Positions 53,482 through 58,439 of a stretch of DNA of 64,000 nucleotides are shown in pieces (position 1 is the stretch's first letter; the number at the start of each line of letters is the position of its first letter). This DNA is from Octopus bimaculoides (taxonomy: Eukaryota). The DNA is taken from contig NC_069003.1 in assembly GCF_001194135.2 (NCBI RefSeq), positions 31,828,968 through 31,892,967 of the forward strand. The letters are read 5' to 3'. Under the pieces are notes generated by a model that was given only the letters and a program-made list of their open reading frames with translations, did no database searches and was not told where the DNA came from. The position numbers and the translations under genes are program-made.

Positions 53482-53530
53482 TTGCCAAAATATTTTCGTT
53501 GCTTTGAAACCGCGACCTGTTCACTGACAA
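53482..53530 (-). ncRNA. Minimal type-I hammerhead-ribozyme-like motif with a G3:C8 core variant
   Basis: ttgtca GUGAACA g gtcgc-ggtttcaaa-gcaac GAA AAUAUU U tggcaa: stem I of 6 bp, stem II with 4 of 5 pairs, palindromic stem III. Confidence 0.6.
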
Positions 53531-54239
53531 CTCAACAGCAAGTTAGACAATTTACTATGTGTGTGCACAGTTGTGTCTTTCCAAGGCAACCACCCCTGAT
53601 TCAGAAAAATCAGTACTCTGGAAAGGTTTTGAAACAATAAGCAGACCCCATTCCAAACCACCCACCTCAGAAAATATTTTAGTCACCAGTATAGCAAAAG
53701 GCATAAAATTTATTTATGTATAAGTCGTGGCATGTACATATGTACATGACAAACTTACAAATAATAGAAGAAAATAATATATCAAGAATGAGTTGTATAA
53801 AAAGTAATTCTTTATGGAAGAGTGGTCCCACCTTTTGCCTTTAACTGAAGAAGTAAATCCTTACAAAATGAATAGGCCCACTGCCAACTAACCCATCTGC
53901 CCTCACTCTCCATTCTGTCTGGTCTGGTCAGGTATGCACTGACATTGAAAAGAAGCAAATAAAAGTGAAATAATCATAACCTTAATATTAACAACCTCAC
54001 GGGTCTTTTTCCACATAGAGAAACTTGAAAAAATTTATCAGAGTCCAATTTTAATCAGGAATATTTTCTTGAAAACCTTATATTCTAACATTTTTTTTAT
54101 AGATAGCCAATAATCCATAAAATGAGAAAGGGTAGTACCGAAGACCTTTTCATGGGGGCTCAAGAGAAAGGATAATATCAAAGACTTTTTCATGGGAATC
54201 ATGAAGCTGTATGTATTGTAGATGGAAAAAAATACTTAC

Positions 54240-54661
54240 CAAACGACATTTCTCACAGGGTGAAGAACTTCCAGTACTTATGCTATCTGCTTTCTGAACT
54301 TTCTTACCCCTTTTCCATTTAAATGGGCTTTTGCTCTTGTCAGTACTCCGAGTTTTAGTTAGATCTGGTCTGCTGCCATCAACTTGCGTTGGTGGAGAGT
54401 CTTGCATGATTTTAGAGCTGTCTGACAGCCTAGGAGAATCGGTAGACTTCTCATCATCTGTTAATCTTGTGGAGTCTAAAATTTTGGCTGTGTCCCCACT
54501 TTTGATTGTATCACTGCTCTTAACGGAATCGGAACTCTTGGTAGACTCCAGACTTTTGGTCGTCTCACAGCTTTTTGAAACATCTGTAACGGTTACGGTG
54601 GGGACTTCTCCAGCGTTATCGACCATGAGCCACTCATCATTCTTTGCAGCAGTATTCCCAG
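54240..54661 (-). CDS. TBC1D2B: Coding exon (422 nt, phase 1-0), Ser/Thr/Lys-rich linker of a TBC1D2/TBC1D2B-like Rab-GAP
   Basis: ttttttccAG at 54662-54663 and GTAAGT at 54238-54239. Open frame GNTAAKNDEWLMVD...SPCEKCRL; NDEWLMVD resembles NEEWELLD of TBC1D2B. Ends in phase 0, matching the next exon. Confidence 0.85.
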
Positions 54662-54759
54662 CTGGAAAAAAAACCATTGACAACATAGAGTTAATAAGAC
54701 GACACACATGAAACATTATTTACATTTGACGGATATTTATCCTCATCTTGTTTGTTGCT

Positions 54760-54802
54760 AACACATTTCGGCTGATATACCCTCCAGCCTTCGTCAGGTG
54801 TC
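54760..54802 (-). ncRNA. Hammerhead-like motif with a damaged stem III, inside a tRNA-headed repeat
   Basis: gacac CUGACGA a ggctg-gagggtatat-cagcc GAAA t gtgtt. Stems I and II are intact; stem III is collapsed. Confidence 0.6.
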
Positions 54803-54880
54803 TTGGGGAAATTTCGAACCTGGGTTCTCATTCCTAACGATGTTACTATTATTATATTGTTATTATTATTATTATTCCAC

Positions 54881-54940
54881 GGGCATATGGCGTAGTGGTT
54901 AAGAGCGCGGGCTACTAACCCCAAGGTTCCGAGTTCGATT
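54881..54940 (+). mobile_element. tRNA-like (Pol III) head of the hammerhead-bearing element, truncated in the B box
   Basis: A box TGGCGTAGTGG and B box GAGTTCGATT. The insertion is bounded by the 13-bp direct repeat cacacatgaaaca (54703-54715 and 54941-54953). Confidence 0.65.
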
Positions 54941-55311
54941 CACACATGAAACAGTTTTTTTTTTTTTTTCATAAAGTCAAGCAGAAAAGCTTAATAATCG
55001 GTAAAAACTGAATTGAAATGCCAAACACTTACCACTCTAGAAGTCATAATAAACAAGAAGTGTGTGTGTGTGTGTGTGCACGTTCTTGACCATTATGCCA
55101 TATGTCTGTGGGCATATGGCGTACTGGAGGACAAACAAGATGAGGACAAATATCCGTTGAATGTAAATAATGTAAATAATGTAAATAATATAAATAATGT
55201 AAATAATGCACATAATTCCTCATCTCTTAAATATAGAACTGAACTAACTTTATATCAGTGCATAAACAAGCACATAAACATTATAATATATACATACATA
55301 CATACATACAT

Positions 55312-55358
<47 letters not shown>

Positions 55359-55436
55359 TACACATATTCGTTGATGCCATTCCCTATGTAGGTACAAAAG
55401 TAATTCTTTCCCAAATAAACTGCACTTCATATTCAA

Positions 55437-55517
55437 GGCTCTGATGAAGCTATAAGGTGTTATTCAGGCACTCAACTATGTGTCCACTGCATCTCATAGC
55501 AGAAACAGCTGTAAGCT
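55437..55517 (+). ncRNA. Minimal type-I hammerhead-like motif with a perfect palindromic stem III
   Basis: ggct CUGAUGA a gctat...atagc a GAA ACAGCUGU A agct; predicted GUA site after 55513. Confidence 0.55.
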
Positions 55518-55561
55518 ACTGAAGATAATAAGGTAATCTATTCCTTTATCATCTAGCTTTC

Positions 55562-55623
<62 letters not shown>

Positions 55624-55779
55624 ATGTGAGTGTGTGTGTGCTCACACATGTGTGTGTAACCACATTTCCCAATGTGTTCTTCACATTTATTTTCAAATGG
55701 TAAGGAGTGATATGAAGGACCTTTGGCTGCTCTTTCTAACAAGTTTTAAGTTATGATACTTTTTTTTTTTTATATATAT

Positions 55780-56600
55780 CCTGAGATCAAATCCTGTCAA
55801 GATCAACTATGTCTTTCATCTTGCAGGGGGTCAATAAAATAAAATTCCAATCAAATACTGTAACATAAAGAACATTTGGTTGCTATTTCTAGCATGTCTT
55901 TAGTTATGACACTTTGCTCTACATTCTGAGCTCAAACCCAGCTAAGATCAACTTTGCCTTTCATCCTGCAGGGGTCAATAACATAAAATACTGATCAAAT
56001 AGTGTTTCATATAAAGGACATTTAGTTGCTATTTCTAGCAAGTCTTTAGTCAGGACACTTTGCTTTACGTTCTGAGGTCAAGTCCTGCTAAGATCAACCT
56101 TGCCTTAAAAATTTCAGGGTTCAATGAAATGAAGTACCAATCAAATAGCAGCACTGATTTAACATTCCTATAAAGCATCCTTGATGTTAAATCATAATAC
56201 TAGACTAAGACTAACATTAAATTTTATCCTTTTGGCATTGATATAATATAGTACCAGCAAAGTACTGAGGTTGATTCAATATTCTTATTAAACAGCCTAG
56301 ATGTGAATAGAATTATAATAGAAAACTAAGACTGGCTTTATCTTTCATCTTCCTAGGATCAATAAAATAGTGTCAGTTTAATATTGCTATAAAACATCCT
56401 AAATATGAACAAAATTATAATAGAAGACTAACTTTGCCATTAATCCTTCTGGGGTTAATAAAATACTAGCCAAGCAGCGGAATCAATTTAATATTCCTTC
56501 CTATAAAGTATCCTAGATGTGAAAGAAATTATAATAGAAGATTAACTCTGCCTTTTCTCCTACCGGGGTTAATAAAATAAAGTACCAGTCAAACAGTTAT
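55780..56600 (+). repeat. Degenerate tandem array (units of about 100-130 bp) built from the SINE family B core
   Basis: Repeated aagatcaactttgcctttcatcctgcaggggtcaataaaataaa...ta variants with increasing divergence. Confidence 0.7.
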
Positions 56601-57392
56601 GTTAATTTGATAATCCGATAAAGCATCCTAGATGTGAGTGACATAAGCATAGCTCTGTGGTTAAGAAGTTTGCTTCCCAACCATGTGGTCTTGGGTTCAG
56701 TCCCACTGTGTGGCATCTTGGTAATGTGTAATTTACTACAGCCATAGGTTGACCAAAAACCTTGTGAGTGAAATTAGTAGATGGAGACTAAAAGAAACCC
56801 ATTGTATGTATGTATGTATATGTNNNNNNNNNNNNNNNNNNNNNNNNNNNNNNNNNNNNNNNNNNNNNNNNNNNNNNNNNNNNNNNNNNNNNNNNNNNNN
56901 NNNNNNNNNNNNNNNNNNNNNNNNNNNNNNNNNNNNNNNNNNNNNNNNNNNNNNNNNNNNNNNNNNNNNNNNNNNNNNNNNNNNNNNNNNNNNNNNNNNN
57001 NNNNNNNNNNNNNNNNNNNNNNNNNNNNNNNNNNNNNNNNNNNNNNNNNNNNNNNNNNNNNNNNNNNNNNNNNNNNNNNNNNNNNNNNNNNNNNNNNNNN
57101 NNNNNNNNNNNNNNNNNNNNNNNNNNNNNNNNNNNNNNNNNNNNNNNNNNNNNNNNNNNNNNNNNNNNNNNNNNNNNNNNNNNNNNNNNNNNNNNNNNNN
57201 NNNNNNNNNNNNNNNNNNNNNNNNNNNNNNNNNNNNNNNNNNNNNNNNNNNNNNNNNNNNNNNNNNNNNNNNNNNNNNNNNNNNNNNNNNNNNNNNNNNN
57301 NNNNNNNNNNNNNNNNNNNNNNNNNNNNNNNNNNNNNNNNNNNNNNNNNNNNNNNNNNNNNNNNNNNNNNNNNNNNNNNNNNNNNNNNNNNN

Positions 57393-57433
<41 letters not shown>

Positions 57434-57732
57434 TAATTTAGAGACAAACCACCATTCCACAACTCAGAGTCAATGAAGAACCCGTCCAAAACCATGCTGT
57501 GGGACATATACCATACAAAATACTAATCTAAAATTGTAATAATATATAATATTGGACAGTAAGATTATTACAATCATATAATATATAAGAGCAAATACTT
57601 TTAAAATCACAGCGAATACTGTACAAAGAAACATTCATCATAAAAATATTAATTTAAAAATCAAATAAAGTATAAATTTAAACAATAAAAATTAATACAA
57701 TAATATAATGTATAAAAGTAAGTACTTTTACA

Positions 57733-57853
57733 TTGACTACGCATGTTTCATGGGTGAATTAGGACTATATAAAATCATATAAGAAAACCATATCCAAGTT
57801 CATTAGAATGGAAAAATGATTTTACACCCAAAAGCAGTCACTCCTCAGGTCAA
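57733..57853 (-). ncRNA. Type-I hammerhead-like motif with an extended, structured stem II
   Basis: ttgac CUGAGGA gtg...gggtg taaaatcat...atgatttta...caccc at GAA AC augc GU A gtcaa. Stem I is a perfect 5 bp; predicted site after 57738. Confidence 0.65.
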
Positions 57854-58210
57854 ATTCCTAAAAAAACCTAAGAACCTAAAAGTTTAACTTACTTCAGAAT
57901 ATGATAAGGAATAAAAATAAGGAATAAAGATATATATAAAGAAACAAAACCCGTAATGTAATCCCTAAGTTAAAGACATTAATATTATTATTAAAAGTTA
58001 CGAGCTAAAAATATTCAAATAGAGTATTATTGTGAACAAGATTAATTCATTATGGAAAAGGTAAATAAATGTAAATACATGTTAGTGTATAAAGTTAATA
58101 AGGACATATGTCAATATTGTTTAGAATAAATTTTAAAAACATGACTTATCTGCAGGCGAATTACTGTAAATTAAACCGAAATAAGTGTACTTTAGCATTT
58201 ATACTGAAAA

Positions 58211-58230
58211 GTCACGTGATAAATATGGCG
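58211..58230 (+). promoter_or_regulatory. E-box/CLEAR-like GTCACGTGAT next to a YY1-like AATATGGCG
   Basis: Motif match only; a CpG-retaining patch in AT-rich DNA. Confidence 0.2.
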
Positions 58231-58333
58231 TCCATTACCCAGAGATAAACACGTATTATATTTACTATAATAATAACGAAATTATTGAAAAAGAAGGTCT
58301 ACCTAAGGTATATTGTTTATTAAAACTTTATTG

Positions 58334-58439
58334 CTCATAACAATCGTTTCAACACATCCTCTTTTAATCCCTTGCGTGTGGGAAACTATATACCTACTTG
58401 TGGTGCATCGCTCAGTGCAGAAGTATCTCATCAGGTGAG
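58334..58439 (-). ncRNA. Type-I hammerhead-like motif with a long loop II, apparently CpG-decayed
   Basis: ctcac CUGAUGA gatac...gtgtt GAA AC gauu GU U atgag, followed by AATAAA. Confidence 0.55.

What the first reader, a model, noticed from the sequence alone, without database searches (positions are those of the whole stretch)
53482..58439. Cluster of five unrelated minimal hammerhead-ribozyme-like motifs in 5 kb of intron around one exon
Seen: five motifs with the full type-I layout (stem I, NUGANNA core, stem II, GAA, short near-palindromic stem III, NUH) at 53482(-), 54760(-), 55437(+), 57733(-) and 58334(-). They share no sequence outside the core, and I found only one relic in the other 59 kb or so. 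Established: minimal type-I hammerheads with palindromic stem III occur in Penelope-like element termini and animal retrozymes and cleave mainly as dimers. Inference: this is a hotspot of Penelope-related or retrozyme insertions. Four of the five are sense to the TBC1D2B-like pre-mRNA and could cut its introns co-transcriptionally.
Basis: partly seen in the sequence, partly recalled or inferred. Interest (0 to 1): 0.75.

Follow-up and report, generated by a model that had tools for sequence, protein, structure and literature searches.

The report
Hammerhead-shaped relics clustered in an intron
An intronic stretch of an AT-rich, SINE-rich animal genome holds more hammerhead-ribozyme-shaped sequences than chance predicts, but each breaks at least one rule needed for cutting, so they look like worn remains of ribozyme-carrying mobile elements, not working RNA scissors.

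Summary
All five motifs are at the stated coordinates with the stated layout. Three (55432+, 57733-, 58334-) carry the canonical CUGANGA/GAA core. One (53482-) has positions 3 and 8 swapped. One (54760-) has G at the cleavage site and no stem I.

Canonical-core full layouts with a short stem III are commoner: 4 in the window, all within 50.7-58.4 kb, against 0.2-0.5 expected, and first of 540 permuted-core decoys.

New here: motif 1 has a paralog at 31285-31329(-). That copy is a compact min-hammerhead fold with a bulged nucleotide, G10.1-C11.1, 6-bp stems I and II and a palindromic stem III, but a G3/C8 core. There were 0 such hits in 1500 shuffles.

Motif 2 has the 5' two-thirds of a Penelope-type min-hammerhead. 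Motifs 3-5 have 54-92-nt stem II inserts, no G10.1-C11.1 pair, and (4, 5) negligible probability of the hammerhead fold.

No RT/GIY-YIG remnants, tandem units or cross-species conservation were found.

Verdict: probably eroded hammerhead-type relics mixed with coincidences. Activity and the Penelope hotspot idea are unproven. The significance criteria were fixed post hoc.

The parts
53482..53530 (-). c1: UUGUCA-GUGAACA-G-GUCGCG..AGCAAC-GAA-AAUAUU-U-UGGCAA. Compact min-hammerhead layout with a G3/C8-swapped core. Member of a repeat family.
   Evidence: Stem I is 6/6 paired and stem II 4/6. It has a bulged G, a G10.1-C11.1 pair and a palindromic stem III. P(HH fold) is 5e-4.
31285..31329 (-). 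x: paralog of c1, outside the finding's span. AUGUCA-GUGACCA-G-GUUGCA-GUUCA-UGUGAC-GAA-AAUU-U-UGAUAU. This is the best-formed motif in the window.
   Evidence: The HH fold is essentially the MFE (P 0.076). It is the only hit of the hallmark descriptor, with 0 hits in 1500 shuffles. Only this locus scores among 540 decoy cores.
52381..52581 (-). Third, degenerate copy of the c1/x repeat family. It lacks the hammerhead-like core.
   Evidence: nhmmer E 8.9e-6; alignment. 52542-52575/80 is about 97% identical to the stretch just 5' of c1.
54760..54802 (-). c2: GACAC-CUGACGA-A-GGCUGG..UCAGCC-GAAA-UGUG. A canonical 5' two-thirds of a min-hammerhead with a broken cleavage site (G17) and no stem I in register.
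   Evidence: The half-motif is expected 0.001 times per window in shuffles and appears in 0.8% of decoys.
54714..54842 (-). SINE-like element that carries c2. It has a B-box-like GGTTCGAAATTTCC (54807-54820) and a tail ACAAACAAGATGAGGATAAATATCCGTCAAATGTAAATAATG (54714-54755). An inverted second tail lies at 55131-55172, joined to a tRNA-SINE head.
55432..55523 (+). c3: canonical CUGAUGA core with an A.A mismatch at 10.1/11.1. Stem II is a stable 16-bp three-segment hairpin (54-nt spacer) and stem III is the palindrome ACAGCUGU. N17 is A and stem I is 4+4 bp. It is antisense to the exon.
   Evidence: The stem II insert folds at -18.2 kcal/mol, z -4.0, beaten by 0 of 200 shuffles. P(HH fold) is 1.6e-3.
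57733..57853 (-). c4: CUGAGGA core with a 3-bp stem II opened by G.U and a 92-nt insert. GAA-AC-AUGC-GU-A follows, with a 5-bp stem I.
   Evidence: Insert z is -1.7 and P(HH fold) is 6e-8.
58334..58439 (-). c5: CUGAUGA core. Stem II is GAUAC/GUGUU, opened by G.U, with a 77-nt unstructured insert. GAA-ACGAUUGU-U follows. Stem I is 4 bp after a C.A mismatch at 2.1/1.1.
   Evidence: Insert z is +0.85 and P(HH fold) is 5e-6.
50661..50732 (-). c0: extra motif outside the finding's span. CUGAAGA core, 3-bp stem II with a 46-nt unstructured insert, GAA-AGUACU-A (6-nt palindrome), and a weak 4-bp stem I.
54240..54661 (-). Exon around which the motifs lie. The open frame reads AGNTAAKNDEW...CEKCRL, with an AG acceptor and a GTAAGT donor.
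   Evidence: It is 50% identical at protein level to ORFs P0001/P0002. It is the only block alignable to locus L001 (77% nt).
56824..57392 (.). Assembly gap (569 N) flanked by (TGTA)n-like and (AT)n repeats. It touches no motif.

Best explanation
The window holds a mixed set of hammerhead-type sequences. Most are best read as eroded remains of hammerhead-carrying non-autonomous or 5'-truncated retroelements, of the kind described for Penelope-like elements and animal retrozymes. They probably arrived by independent insertions around this exon. None is shown, or likely as it stands, to cut RNA efficiently.

The evidence is graded.
(a) c1 is a diverged copy of a repeat family. The better-preserved copy, x at 31.3 kb, folds as a compact min-hammerhead carrying every invariant except a swapped C3-G8 pair (G3-C8).
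(b) c2 is the 5' two-thirds of a Penelope-type min-hammerhead, embedded in a tRNA-SINE-like element. Its cleavage-site side is destroyed.
(c) c3 is a stable long hairpin whose internal loop spells the canonical core. It could be a hammerhead with an expanded stem II. It could equally be an unrelated hairpin that matches the core by luck.
(d) c4, c5 and the extra c0 are the weakest. They are plausibly coincidences, although their number and clustering are unusual.

Shown: sequence layout, statistics, folds, and the family relation of c1 and x. Inferred: retroelement origin, loss of activity.
For: Enrichment.
- Four canonical-core full layouts with a short stem III are present, against 0.21 (shuffles) or 0.46 (decoy rate per core) expected.
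- My arithmetic gives Poisson P of about 7e-5 to 1e-3.
- The true core ranks 1st of 540 decoys.
- All four lie within 7.8 of 59 non-gap kb.
- Only 1 comparable hit occurs in 544 kb of other AT-rich animal DNA.

Family evidence.
- c1 and x are homologous over about 250 nt (score 107 against a null of 46.5 +/- 8.3; nhmmer).
- x is the only hit of a hallmark descriptor, with 0 hits in 1500 shuffles. The descriptor requires a bulge, G10.1-C11.1, stem II of 5 bp or more, a short palindromic stem III and stem I of 5 bp or more.
- x is the only locus that scores among 540 decoy cores.
- Its MFE is the hammerhead fold.
- Between c1 and x, stem I stays 6/6 paired through three differing positions, one of them a double compensatory change. 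Stem III stays palindromic through a 2-nt indel.

c2.
- The half-motif is expected 0.001 times per window.
- The same A-GGCUGG...CAGCC-GAAA architecture occurs in more than 80 copies of a textbook min-hammerhead family in coral-metagenome contigs.

c3.
- The stem II insert has z = -4.0.

The hallmarks and the dispersed, single, sequence-variable occurrence match PMC4209133.
Against: - The thresholds (1-nt slack, the 'short stem III' criterion) were fixed after seeing the candidates. The window was pre-selected by a reader looking for this pattern, so the nominal P values overstate the evidence.
- None of c0, c3, c4 or c5 has the G10.1-C11.1 pair. Perreault et al. 2011 (PMC3088659) call this the most conserved pair after A15.1-U16.1.
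- All four have 46-92-nt stem II spacers, and there are no hits with a spacer of 40 nt or less. The genuine-looking min-hammerheads in the background DNA have spacers of 16-20 nt.
- c5 and c0 inserts are unstructured, and the hammerhead fold is negligible for c4 and c5.
- No RT/GIY-YIG remnants, no tandem or pLTR repeats and no paralogs for c0, c3, c4 or c5 were found.
- Introns are not alignable with the one related locus, so there is no conservation evidence.
- The third copy of the c1 family lacks the motif.
- A G3-C8 core is not a described natural variant in the papers read. Only U3-A8 is.
Confidence: 0.5

Rival explanations
1. All of it is coincidence plus ordinary hairpins. A loose, gapped descriptor applied to AT-rich DNA full of inverted repeats gives occasional full layouts. 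This window was flagged because it happened to have several.
For:
- With strict adjacency only c4 passes (1 vs 0.13, P=0.12).
- Long stem II spacers and missing G10.1-C11.1 are what chance hits look like.
- Real background DNA gives 1.1-1.8 hits per 59 kb overall.
- My criteria were post hoc, and the number of windows and motif types screened upstream is unknown.
Against: - The true core is first of 540 decoys for short-stem-III hits.
- The four hits cluster in 7.8 kb.
- x had 0 hits in 1500 shuffles and is the only decoy-scoring locus.
- The c2 half-motif is expected 0.001 times per window.
- c1 and x keep the layout through sequence divergence.
Confidence: 0.27
2. They are working ribozymes. 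The sense-strand motifs self-cleave the host pre-mRNA's introns, alone or as dimers through their palindromic stem III, and so modulate processing of this gene.
For: - Five of the seven motifs are on the exon's strand.
- Palindromic stem III segments allow dimer pairing.
- Intronic hammerheads exist in amniotes, in the RECK and C10orf118 introns (PMC3088659).
- Min-hammerheads cleave weakly as dimers (PMC4209133).
Against: - Each sense motif breaks a rule. c2 has G17 (at least a 300-fold loss in minimal forms, PMC3884650) and no stem I. c1 has G3/C8 plus a 4/6 stem II.
- c4 and c5 have G.U at 10.1/11.1, and P(HH fold) is 6e-8 and 5e-6.
- The copies are single, unrelated and 0.6-3 kb apart, so dimers would need two transcripts.
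- No conservation is detectable.
- Vertebrate non-LTR retrozymes are reported to be depleted from introns (bioRxiv 10.64898/2026.07.22.740005 abstract).
Confidence: 0.05
3. They belong to an undescribed lineage-specific hammerhead class with a greatly expanded, sequence-free stem II (c0, c3, c4, c5). A G3-C8 covariant compact class exists alongside it (c1, x). Both are carried by elements that prefer this kind of intronic, microsatellite-rich DNA.
For: - All four canonical-core hits share the combination of a long stem II and a 6-8-nt stem III. That combination is nearly absent from 544 kb of comparison DNA.
- They cluster.
- c3's insert is a very stable hairpin.
- A natural 3-8 covariation (U3-A8) is known in Penelope min-hammerheads.
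Against: - Only c3 has a structured insert.
- No copies or families are available for c0, c3, c4 or c5.
- The rest of the window (51 kb) has none, so the class would not be common.
- Microsatellite adjacency is not significant.
- There are no activity data.
Confidence: 0.1

Closest known systems
Minimal type-I hammerheads (min-HHRs) of Penelope-like elements (Cervera & de la Pena 2014, PMC4209133)
   Same: - Type-I order.
- Stem I of 4-6 bp with no defined loop 1.
[quoted passage not shown]
- G10.1-C11.1 (x, c1, c2).
- A 6-bp stem II (x, c2).
- A stem III reduced to a 4-8-nt palindrome (x, c0, c1, c3).
- Mostly dispersed single copies of very variable sequence, sometimes on opposite strands a few hundred bp apart.
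   Different: - No pLTR context and no RT/GIY-YIG ORF.
- x and c1 have G3-C8 instead of C3-G8; only U3-A8 is reported as a natural covariant.
- c2 lacks a valid cleavage site.
- c0, c3, c4 and c5 have 46-92-nt stem II spacers and no G10.1-C11.1 pair.
Metazoan non-LTR retrozymes (Cervera & de la Pena 2020, PMC7229834)
   Same: Type-I hammerheads with a 1-2-bp stem III capped by a palindromic tetraloop (c3 AC-AGCU-GU; compare c4 and c5). Low-GC host sequence. Some act as dimers.
   Different: Retrozymes are tandem repeats of about 170-400 bp, each with one hammerhead of the same family, usually with loop 1-loop 2 contacts. Here there is no tandem unit and no similarity between motifs.
Schistosoma Sm-alpha SINE-like repeats with a hammerhead (cited in PMC4209133 and PMC7229834; element structure from my own knowledge)
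   Same: c2 lies just 3' of a tRNA-like B-box region inside a SINE-like element with a short-repeat tail. This is the same promoter-then-ribozyme order.
   Different: Sm-alpha hammerheads are canonical and active. c2 is incomplete, and only one copy with the motif is available here.
Intronic hammerheads HH9/HH10 of amniotes (RECK, C10orf118; PMC3088659)
   Same: Sense-strand position inside an intron of a protein-coding gene.
   Different: Those are compact, conserved across species, active in vitro and matched by Rfam models. Here there is no Rfam match and no detectable conservation.
Discontinuous hammerhead of rodent Clec2 3' UTRs (my own knowledge, cited as Martick et al. 2008 in PMC4209133)
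   Same: A hammerhead core whose parts are separated by a long insert.
   Different: In Clec2 the insert is, as I recall, in stem I, and the core and stems are otherwise canonical and active.

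Membership tests
Hammerhead ribozyme (catalytic core consensus) | C3 U4 G5 A6 N7 G8 A9 on the 5' side of stem II | tested here: inconclusive
   Met by c0, c2, c3, c4 and c5. Not met by c1 (GUGAACA) or x (GUGACCA), which have positions 3 and 8 swapped.
Hammerhead ribozyme (catalytic core consensus) | G12 A13 A14, an A15.1-U16.1 pair, and N17 not G | tested here: inconclusive
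   Met by x, c0, c1, c3, c4 and c5. c2 has G at position 17 in the only register that keeps A15.1-U16.1. G17 costs at least 300-fold in minimal forms (PMC3884650).
Hammerhead ribozyme (catalytic core consensus) | G10.1-C11.1 (or at least a Watson-Crick pair) closing stem II next to the core | tested here: inconclusive
   Met by x, c1 and c2. c3 has A.A, c4 and c5 have G.U, and c0 has A-U after a slack nucleotide. This is the most conserved pair after 15.1-16.1, and U.U is the best tolerated mismatch (PMC3088659).
Hammerhead ribozyme (catalytic core consensus) | A three-helix junction that the RNA actually adopts | tested here: inconclusive
   The ensemble probability of the hammerhead fold is x 0.076, c3 1.6e-3, c1 5e-4, c5 5e-6 and c4 6e-8.
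Hammerhead ribozyme (catalytic core consensus) | Site-specific self-cleavage | not testable with these tools
   Needs transcription and cleavage assays or RNA end mapping.
Penelope-type min-HHR (PMC4209133) | Consensus families within a genome, with covariation and compensatory changes | tested here: inconclusive
   Only c1 has a paralog (x). One double compensatory change and two compatible changes occur in stem I. The third copy lacks the motif. c0, c2 (motif part), c3, c4 and c5 have no paralog in the window. The source genome is not available.
Penelope-type min-HHR (PMC4209133) | [quoted passage not shown] | tested here: inconclusive
   All three features are present in x. c1 and c2 each have two or three of them. 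c3 has the bulge and the palindrome but an expanded stem II. c4 and c5 do not have them.
Penelope-type min-HHR (PMC4209133) | Location in pseudo-LTRs flanking an RT + GIY-YIG ORF, or in truncated copies of such elements | tested here: not met
   No Pfam family at E<=0.1 in any open frame of 45 aa or more across 50-59 kb on either strand. No direct repeats. Old truncated copies cannot be excluded without the genome's repeat library.
Metazoan non-LTR retrozyme (PMC7229834) | Head-to-tail repeats of about 170-400 bp, each with a type-I hammerhead | tested here: not met
   No tandem unit holds a motif. c5 and c4 are 601 nt apart, and a local alignment of the c4- and c5-bearing halves of 57431-58535 scores 33 against a null of 26 +/- 3, maximum 40.
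Rfam hammerhead families | Covariance-model score at or near the gathering threshold | tested here: not met
   No hammerhead-family match at gathering threshold in the window, nor at E<=10 in 52500-59500. This is a weak test: the same models also miss textbook min-hammerheads in L012, L049 and L120 and a classical one in L025.

The most novel reading that the evidence does not exclude
This genome carries natural hammerhead variants not yet described. One is a compact min-hammerhead family whose catalytic C3-G8 pair is replaced by G3-C8 (x, c1). The other is a class with canonical cores but a greatly expanded stem II (c3, perhaps c0, c4, c5). They are concentrated, mostly in sense, in the introns around one exon, where weak or dimer-dependent cleavage could affect processing of the host transcript.
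Probability: 0.1. Interest if true: 0.75.

Novelty: new member of a known kind. Interest (0 to 1): 0.4.

Why it matters
If the c1/x family is a real hammerhead lineage, it would be a natural test of how far the C3-G8 pair can be exchanged. It would also extend Penelope-type min-hammerheads to a group of animals for which I found no report in the library searched.

A true cluster of sense-strand ribozymes in the introns of one gene would bear on whether dispersed hammerheads influence pre-mRNA processing.

If it is relics plus coincidence, the lesson is practical. Loose hammerhead descriptors need decoy-core controls, and Rfam models do not see minimal forms.

Tried and rejected
- Rfam at gathering threshold and at E<=10 gave no hammerhead. 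Calibration showed the models miss minimal forms, so this carries little weight.
- ARAGORN found no tRNA genes.
- A BLAST self-comparison found no repeats under the five motifs. It missed the c1/x homology, which local alignment and nhmmer found later.
- Cross-species test: the only related locus (L001) aligns in the exon only.
- No locus L001-L008 shares repeats with the motif-bearing segments.
- An exact-pattern scan of metagenome contigs with the SINE tail gave 0 hits.
- Scans of viral and prokaryotic contigs with a c1/x pattern gave only hits scattered over unrelated phage and bacterial contigs, with no sign of a related element, so they were discarded.
- Microsatellite adjacency as a Penelope target-site signature is not significant (3 of 6 within 150 bp against 27% by chance).
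- Regular spacing or a hidden tandem array was rejected.
- A box C/D snoRNA reading of CUGAUGA...CUGA was rejected by eye, because no terminal stem or D box is in the right place.
- The host gene name could not be confirmed. There is no Pfam domain in candidate exons, and the third homology search had no hits.
- Literature string searches for the helix II sequences returned only primers.
- MAFFT misaligned stems I and III of c1 and x, so pairs were tabulated by hand.

Full report
**Setting.** The window is AT-rich (35.7% G+C), has 14 assembly gaps, and is full of microsatellites and tRNA-derived SINE-like repeats.

An exon lies on the minus strand at about 54240-54661. It has a polypyrimidine tract plus AG acceptor, a GTAAGT donor and an open frame. 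Its translation is 50% identical to two unnamed ORF products. One of those comes from a 163-kb contig (L001), and the exon is the only part that aligns to that contig (77% nt).

The name 'TBC1D2B-like' could not be checked. There is no Pfam domain in candidate exons, and the last homology search had no hits. The taxon is not established; the SINE types suggest a cephalopod, from my own knowledge only.

**The gap.** The gap at 56824-57392 (569 N) lies between motif 3 and motif 4 and touches neither. The nearest motif edge is 341 nt away. It is flanked by (TGTA)n-like and (AT)n repeats, so the assembly broke inside microsatellite sequence.

Continuity and true length cannot be tested here. No coding frame crosses the gap. 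The consequence is limited to this: the span and the density are estimates.

| Motif | Position | Layout |
|---|---|---|
| c1 | 53482-53530(-) | UUGUCA GUGAACA G GUCGCG..AGCAAC GAA AAUAUU U UGGCAA |
| c2 | 54760-54802(-) | GACAC CUGACGA A GGCUGG..UCAGCC GAAA UGUG.. |
| c3 | 55432-55523(+) | ..GGCU CUGAUGA A GCUAU[43 nt]AUAGC A GAA ACAGCUGU A AGCU.. |
| c4 | 57733-57853(-) | UUGAC CUGAGGA GUG[86 nt]CAU GAA ACAUGCGU A GUCAA |
| c5 | 58334-58439(-) | CUCA-C CUGAUGA GAUAC[67 nt]GUGUU GAA ACGAUUGU U A-UGAG |

They share nothing outside the core. Three have the canonical core. c1 has positions 3 and 8 swapped. c2 has G at the cleavage position and no stem I in register.

**Is it more than chance?** I wrote a descriptor for the type-I order: stem I, core, stem II, GAA, A15.1...U16.1, H17, stem I.

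Only 3 of them fall in the region.
- With the canonical core and one nucleotide of slack at stems I and II there are four hits: c3, c4, c5 and a further one, c0, at 50661-50732(-). Expectation is about 1.1 (P=0.03).
- All four have a stem III span of 7 nt or less (GAAAC-NNNN-GU-H three times, GAA-AGUACU-A once). Shuffles give 0.21 such hits per window.
- I then kept the real sequence and permuted the core letters (540 decoys). The true core is the single best: 4 hits against a mean of 0.21, with the next best at 3. Per occurrence of the core word the rate is 0.10 against 0.0115, which gives an expectation of 0.46.
- My Poisson arithmetic on these expectations gives P between about 7e-5 and 1e-3.
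- The four lie within 7.8 of 59 non-gap kb. Extending stem II to 300 nt adds only hits with a long stem III.

I also checked real DNA of similar composition.
- 163 kb around transposase homologs (L001-L008) gave 5 hits, 2 of them with a short stem III.
- 381 kb of AT-rich metagenome-derived animal contigs gave 7 hits outside the family used to fetch them.
- In those 381 kb, the hits with spacers of 29 nt or more all have a long stem III. The two with a short stem III are compact and look genuine.
- Only one hit in the 544 kb (L004) combines a long stem II with a short stem III.

All these thresholds were fixed after I had seen the candidates. The window was also pre-selected by a reader looking for this pattern. 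The P values are therefore upper bounds on the strength of the evidence.

**What the motifs are like.** Cervera & de la Pena 2014 (PMC4209133) list the features that made random origin unlikely for Penelope min-hammerheads:
- genome families with covariation;
- a conserved G10.1-C11.1 pair;
- a palindromic 15.2-16.2/loop 3;
- stem II of 6-8 bp and stem I of 4-5 bp.

Perreault et al. 2011 (PMC3088659).1-11.1 the most conserved pair after 15.1-16.1.

*c0, c3, c4 and c5* do poorly against this list.
- None has G10.1-C11.1. They have A-U after slack, A.A, G.U and G.U respectively.
- Their stem II spacers are 46-92 nt, and no hit has a spacer of 40 nt or less.
- The inserts of c5 and c0 are unstructured (z +0.85 and +0.19) and that of c4 is marginal (z -1.7).
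- c3 is the exception. Its insert is a stable three-segment 16-bp hairpin (-18.2 kcal/mol, z -4.0, 0 of 200 shuffles as good).
- The ensemble probability of the hammerhead fold is 1.6e-3 for c3, 5e-6 for c5 and 6e-8 for c4.

*c2* is different.
- CUGACGA, a bulged A, G10.1-C11.1, a 6-bp stem II with an 8-nt loop, then GAAA. This half-motif is expected 0.001 times per window in shuffles and occurs in 0.8% of decoys.
- A scan of metagenome contigs for CTGANGANGGCTGG(4-12)CAGCCGAAA returned more than 120 loci.
- Most belong to one family, probably coral host DNA: GUAC CUGAAGA A GGCUGGUUUGGCCAGCC GAAA UAUA GUAC. This is a textbook min-hammerhead with a 4-bp stem I, an AUAU palindrome and A17.
- c2 has the same 5' two-thirds but reads GAAA UGUG UUAGC, with G at position 17. 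The stretch complementary to its stem I strand sits three nucleotides too early. It cannot be completed in any register.
- It lies just 3' of a B-box-like sequence inside a SINE-like element. That element's tail recurs, inverted, at 55131-55172, joined to a tRNA-SINE head.

**The family behind c1.** Scanning Watson-Crick variants of the 3-8 pair turned up x at 31285-31329(-): AUGUCA GUGACCA G GUUGCA GUUCA UGUGAC GAA AAUU U UGAUAU.

- c1 and x are homologous over about 250 nt (local score 107 against a null of 46.5 +/- 8.3, maximum 85).
- A profile of the two finds a third, degenerate copy at 52381-52581(-) that lacks the motif.
- x has the bulged nucleotide, G10.1-C11.1, a 6-bp stem II with a 5-nt loop, a palindromic AAUU, U17 and a 6-bp stem I. 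Its minimum-energy structure is essentially the hammerhead fold.
- A hallmark descriptor that allows the four Watson-Crick 3-8 variants finds only x in the window and nothing in 1500 shuffles. Among 540 permuted cores on the real sequence, only this locus scores.
- Between x and c1, stem I is 6/6 paired in both although three positions differ. One difference is a double compensatory change (A-U to U-A).
- Stem II is 6/6 in x and 4/6 in c1. Stem III stays palindromic through a 2-nt indel.

This is the only family-level evidence available, and it rests on two copies. In the papers I read, a U3-A8 covariant is reported in Schistosoma Penelope elements, and G3-C8 only as an engineered variant.

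**Links to Penelope elements or retrozymes.**
- No Pfam family matched any open frame of 45 aa or more in 50-59 kb on either strand, so no RT and no GIY-YIG.
- There are no direct repeats or tandem units containing the motifs. The c5-c4 spacing of 601 nt comes with no similarity.
- c0, c3, c4 and c5 have no paralogs.
- Microsatellite adjacency, a possible target-site signature (PMC8557442), is not significant.
- Animal retrozymes are tandem repeats of about 170-400 nt (PMC7229834), which is not what is seen here.
- A 2026 preprint reports that vertebrate retrozymes are depleted from introns.
- Rfam finds no hammerhead. This means little, because the same models miss the textbook min-hammerheads in L012, L049 and L120 and a classical one in L025.

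**Reading.** The combined statistics make pure coincidence an uncomfortable explanation for the whole set. These are the decoy rank, the clustering, x, and the c2 half-motif. The anatomy, in turn, makes present-day catalysis unlikely for every motif inside the finding's span.

The best account is a mixture.
- c1, with x, and c2 are remains of hammerhead-carrying non-autonomous elements of the Penelope/min-hammerhead kind.
- c3 is either a hammerhead with an expanded stem II or an unrelated hairpin with a lucky internal loop.
- c4, c5 and c0 may be coincidences.

My own knowledge adds that fast ribozymes placed in introns disrupt splicing, so active sense copies would be expected to be selected against.

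**What would settle it.** A genome-wide scan with decoy controls, family consensus and covariation for the c1/x repeat and the c2-bearing SINE-like element, repeat-library annotation, orthologous introns from close relatives, cleavage assays, and RNA end mapping.

Noticed in passing
window 31285-31329 (-), with about 250 nt of flanking homology to 53345-53590: A well-formed compact min-hammerhead-like fold with a G3/C8-swapped core. It is a paralog of motif 1 and lies outside the finding's span.
   Followed up: yes
window 50661-50732 (-): A sixth full-layout motif with a canonical CUGAAGA core and the palindrome AGUACU, 2.8 kb outside the finding's span. Its stems are weak and its 46-nt insert is unstructured.
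   Followed up: yes
window 52542-52580 vs 53533-53570: A near-identical (about 97%) 34-40-nt duplication, about 1 kb apart, ending exactly at the 5' strand of motif 1's stem I. It is part of a degenerate third copy of the same repeat.
   Followed up: partly
window 54714-54941 and 55100-55210: A tRNA-derived SINE head (54881-54941, +). A 5'-truncated SINE-like copy on the minus strand carries motif 2. An internally deleted copy (head joined directly to tail) lies at 55112-55172 with (TAAATAATG)n. The two tails form an inverted repeat about 375 bp apart.
   Followed up: partly
window 55710-56640, 56644-56823 and 58550-58836: 55710-56640 is repeat-covered, with related copies both within the stretch and elsewhere in the window. 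Two multi-copy SINE-like repeats follow it; the first is cut by the assembly gap.
   Followed up: no
window 55296-55666: Motif 3 sits between (CA)n and (TG)n tracts that could pair into a long hairpin. The tracts give low-complexity mir-297-like Rfam matches far below threshold.
   Followed up: no
window 8780-9575 (-) and 15577-16390: A Tc1/mariner-type transposase remnant whose homologs carry DDE_3. A possible non-LTR retrotransposon fragment (zinc-finger-like CxxC...H motif, judged by eye and not tested) is interrupted by a gap.
   Followed up: partly
L009-L128 (metagenome contigs, mostly Ga0126336-Ga0126343): More than 80 copies of one textbook min-hammerhead family, GUAC-CUGAAGA-A-GGCUGGUUUGGCCAGCC-GAAA-UAUA-GUAC. 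Some occur as inverted pairs 100-140 bp apart (L012, L077). Rfam hammerhead models do not report them.
   Followed up: partly
L025 4539-6315 (+): A GC-rich contig has a hammerhead-type motif (4539-4569), a twister-P5 ribozyme (4877-4934, 43 bits) and a pistol ribozyme (6248-6315, 70 bits) within 2 kb on one strand.
   Followed up: no
L008 2470-2512 (-) and 6754-6828 (+): An unrelated animal contig has a compact min-hammerhead-like motif (CUGAUGA GCCU UAC AGGU GAA ACAGUCUGU) and a weak Hammerhead_HH9 match (22 bits, E 0.5).
   Followed up: no
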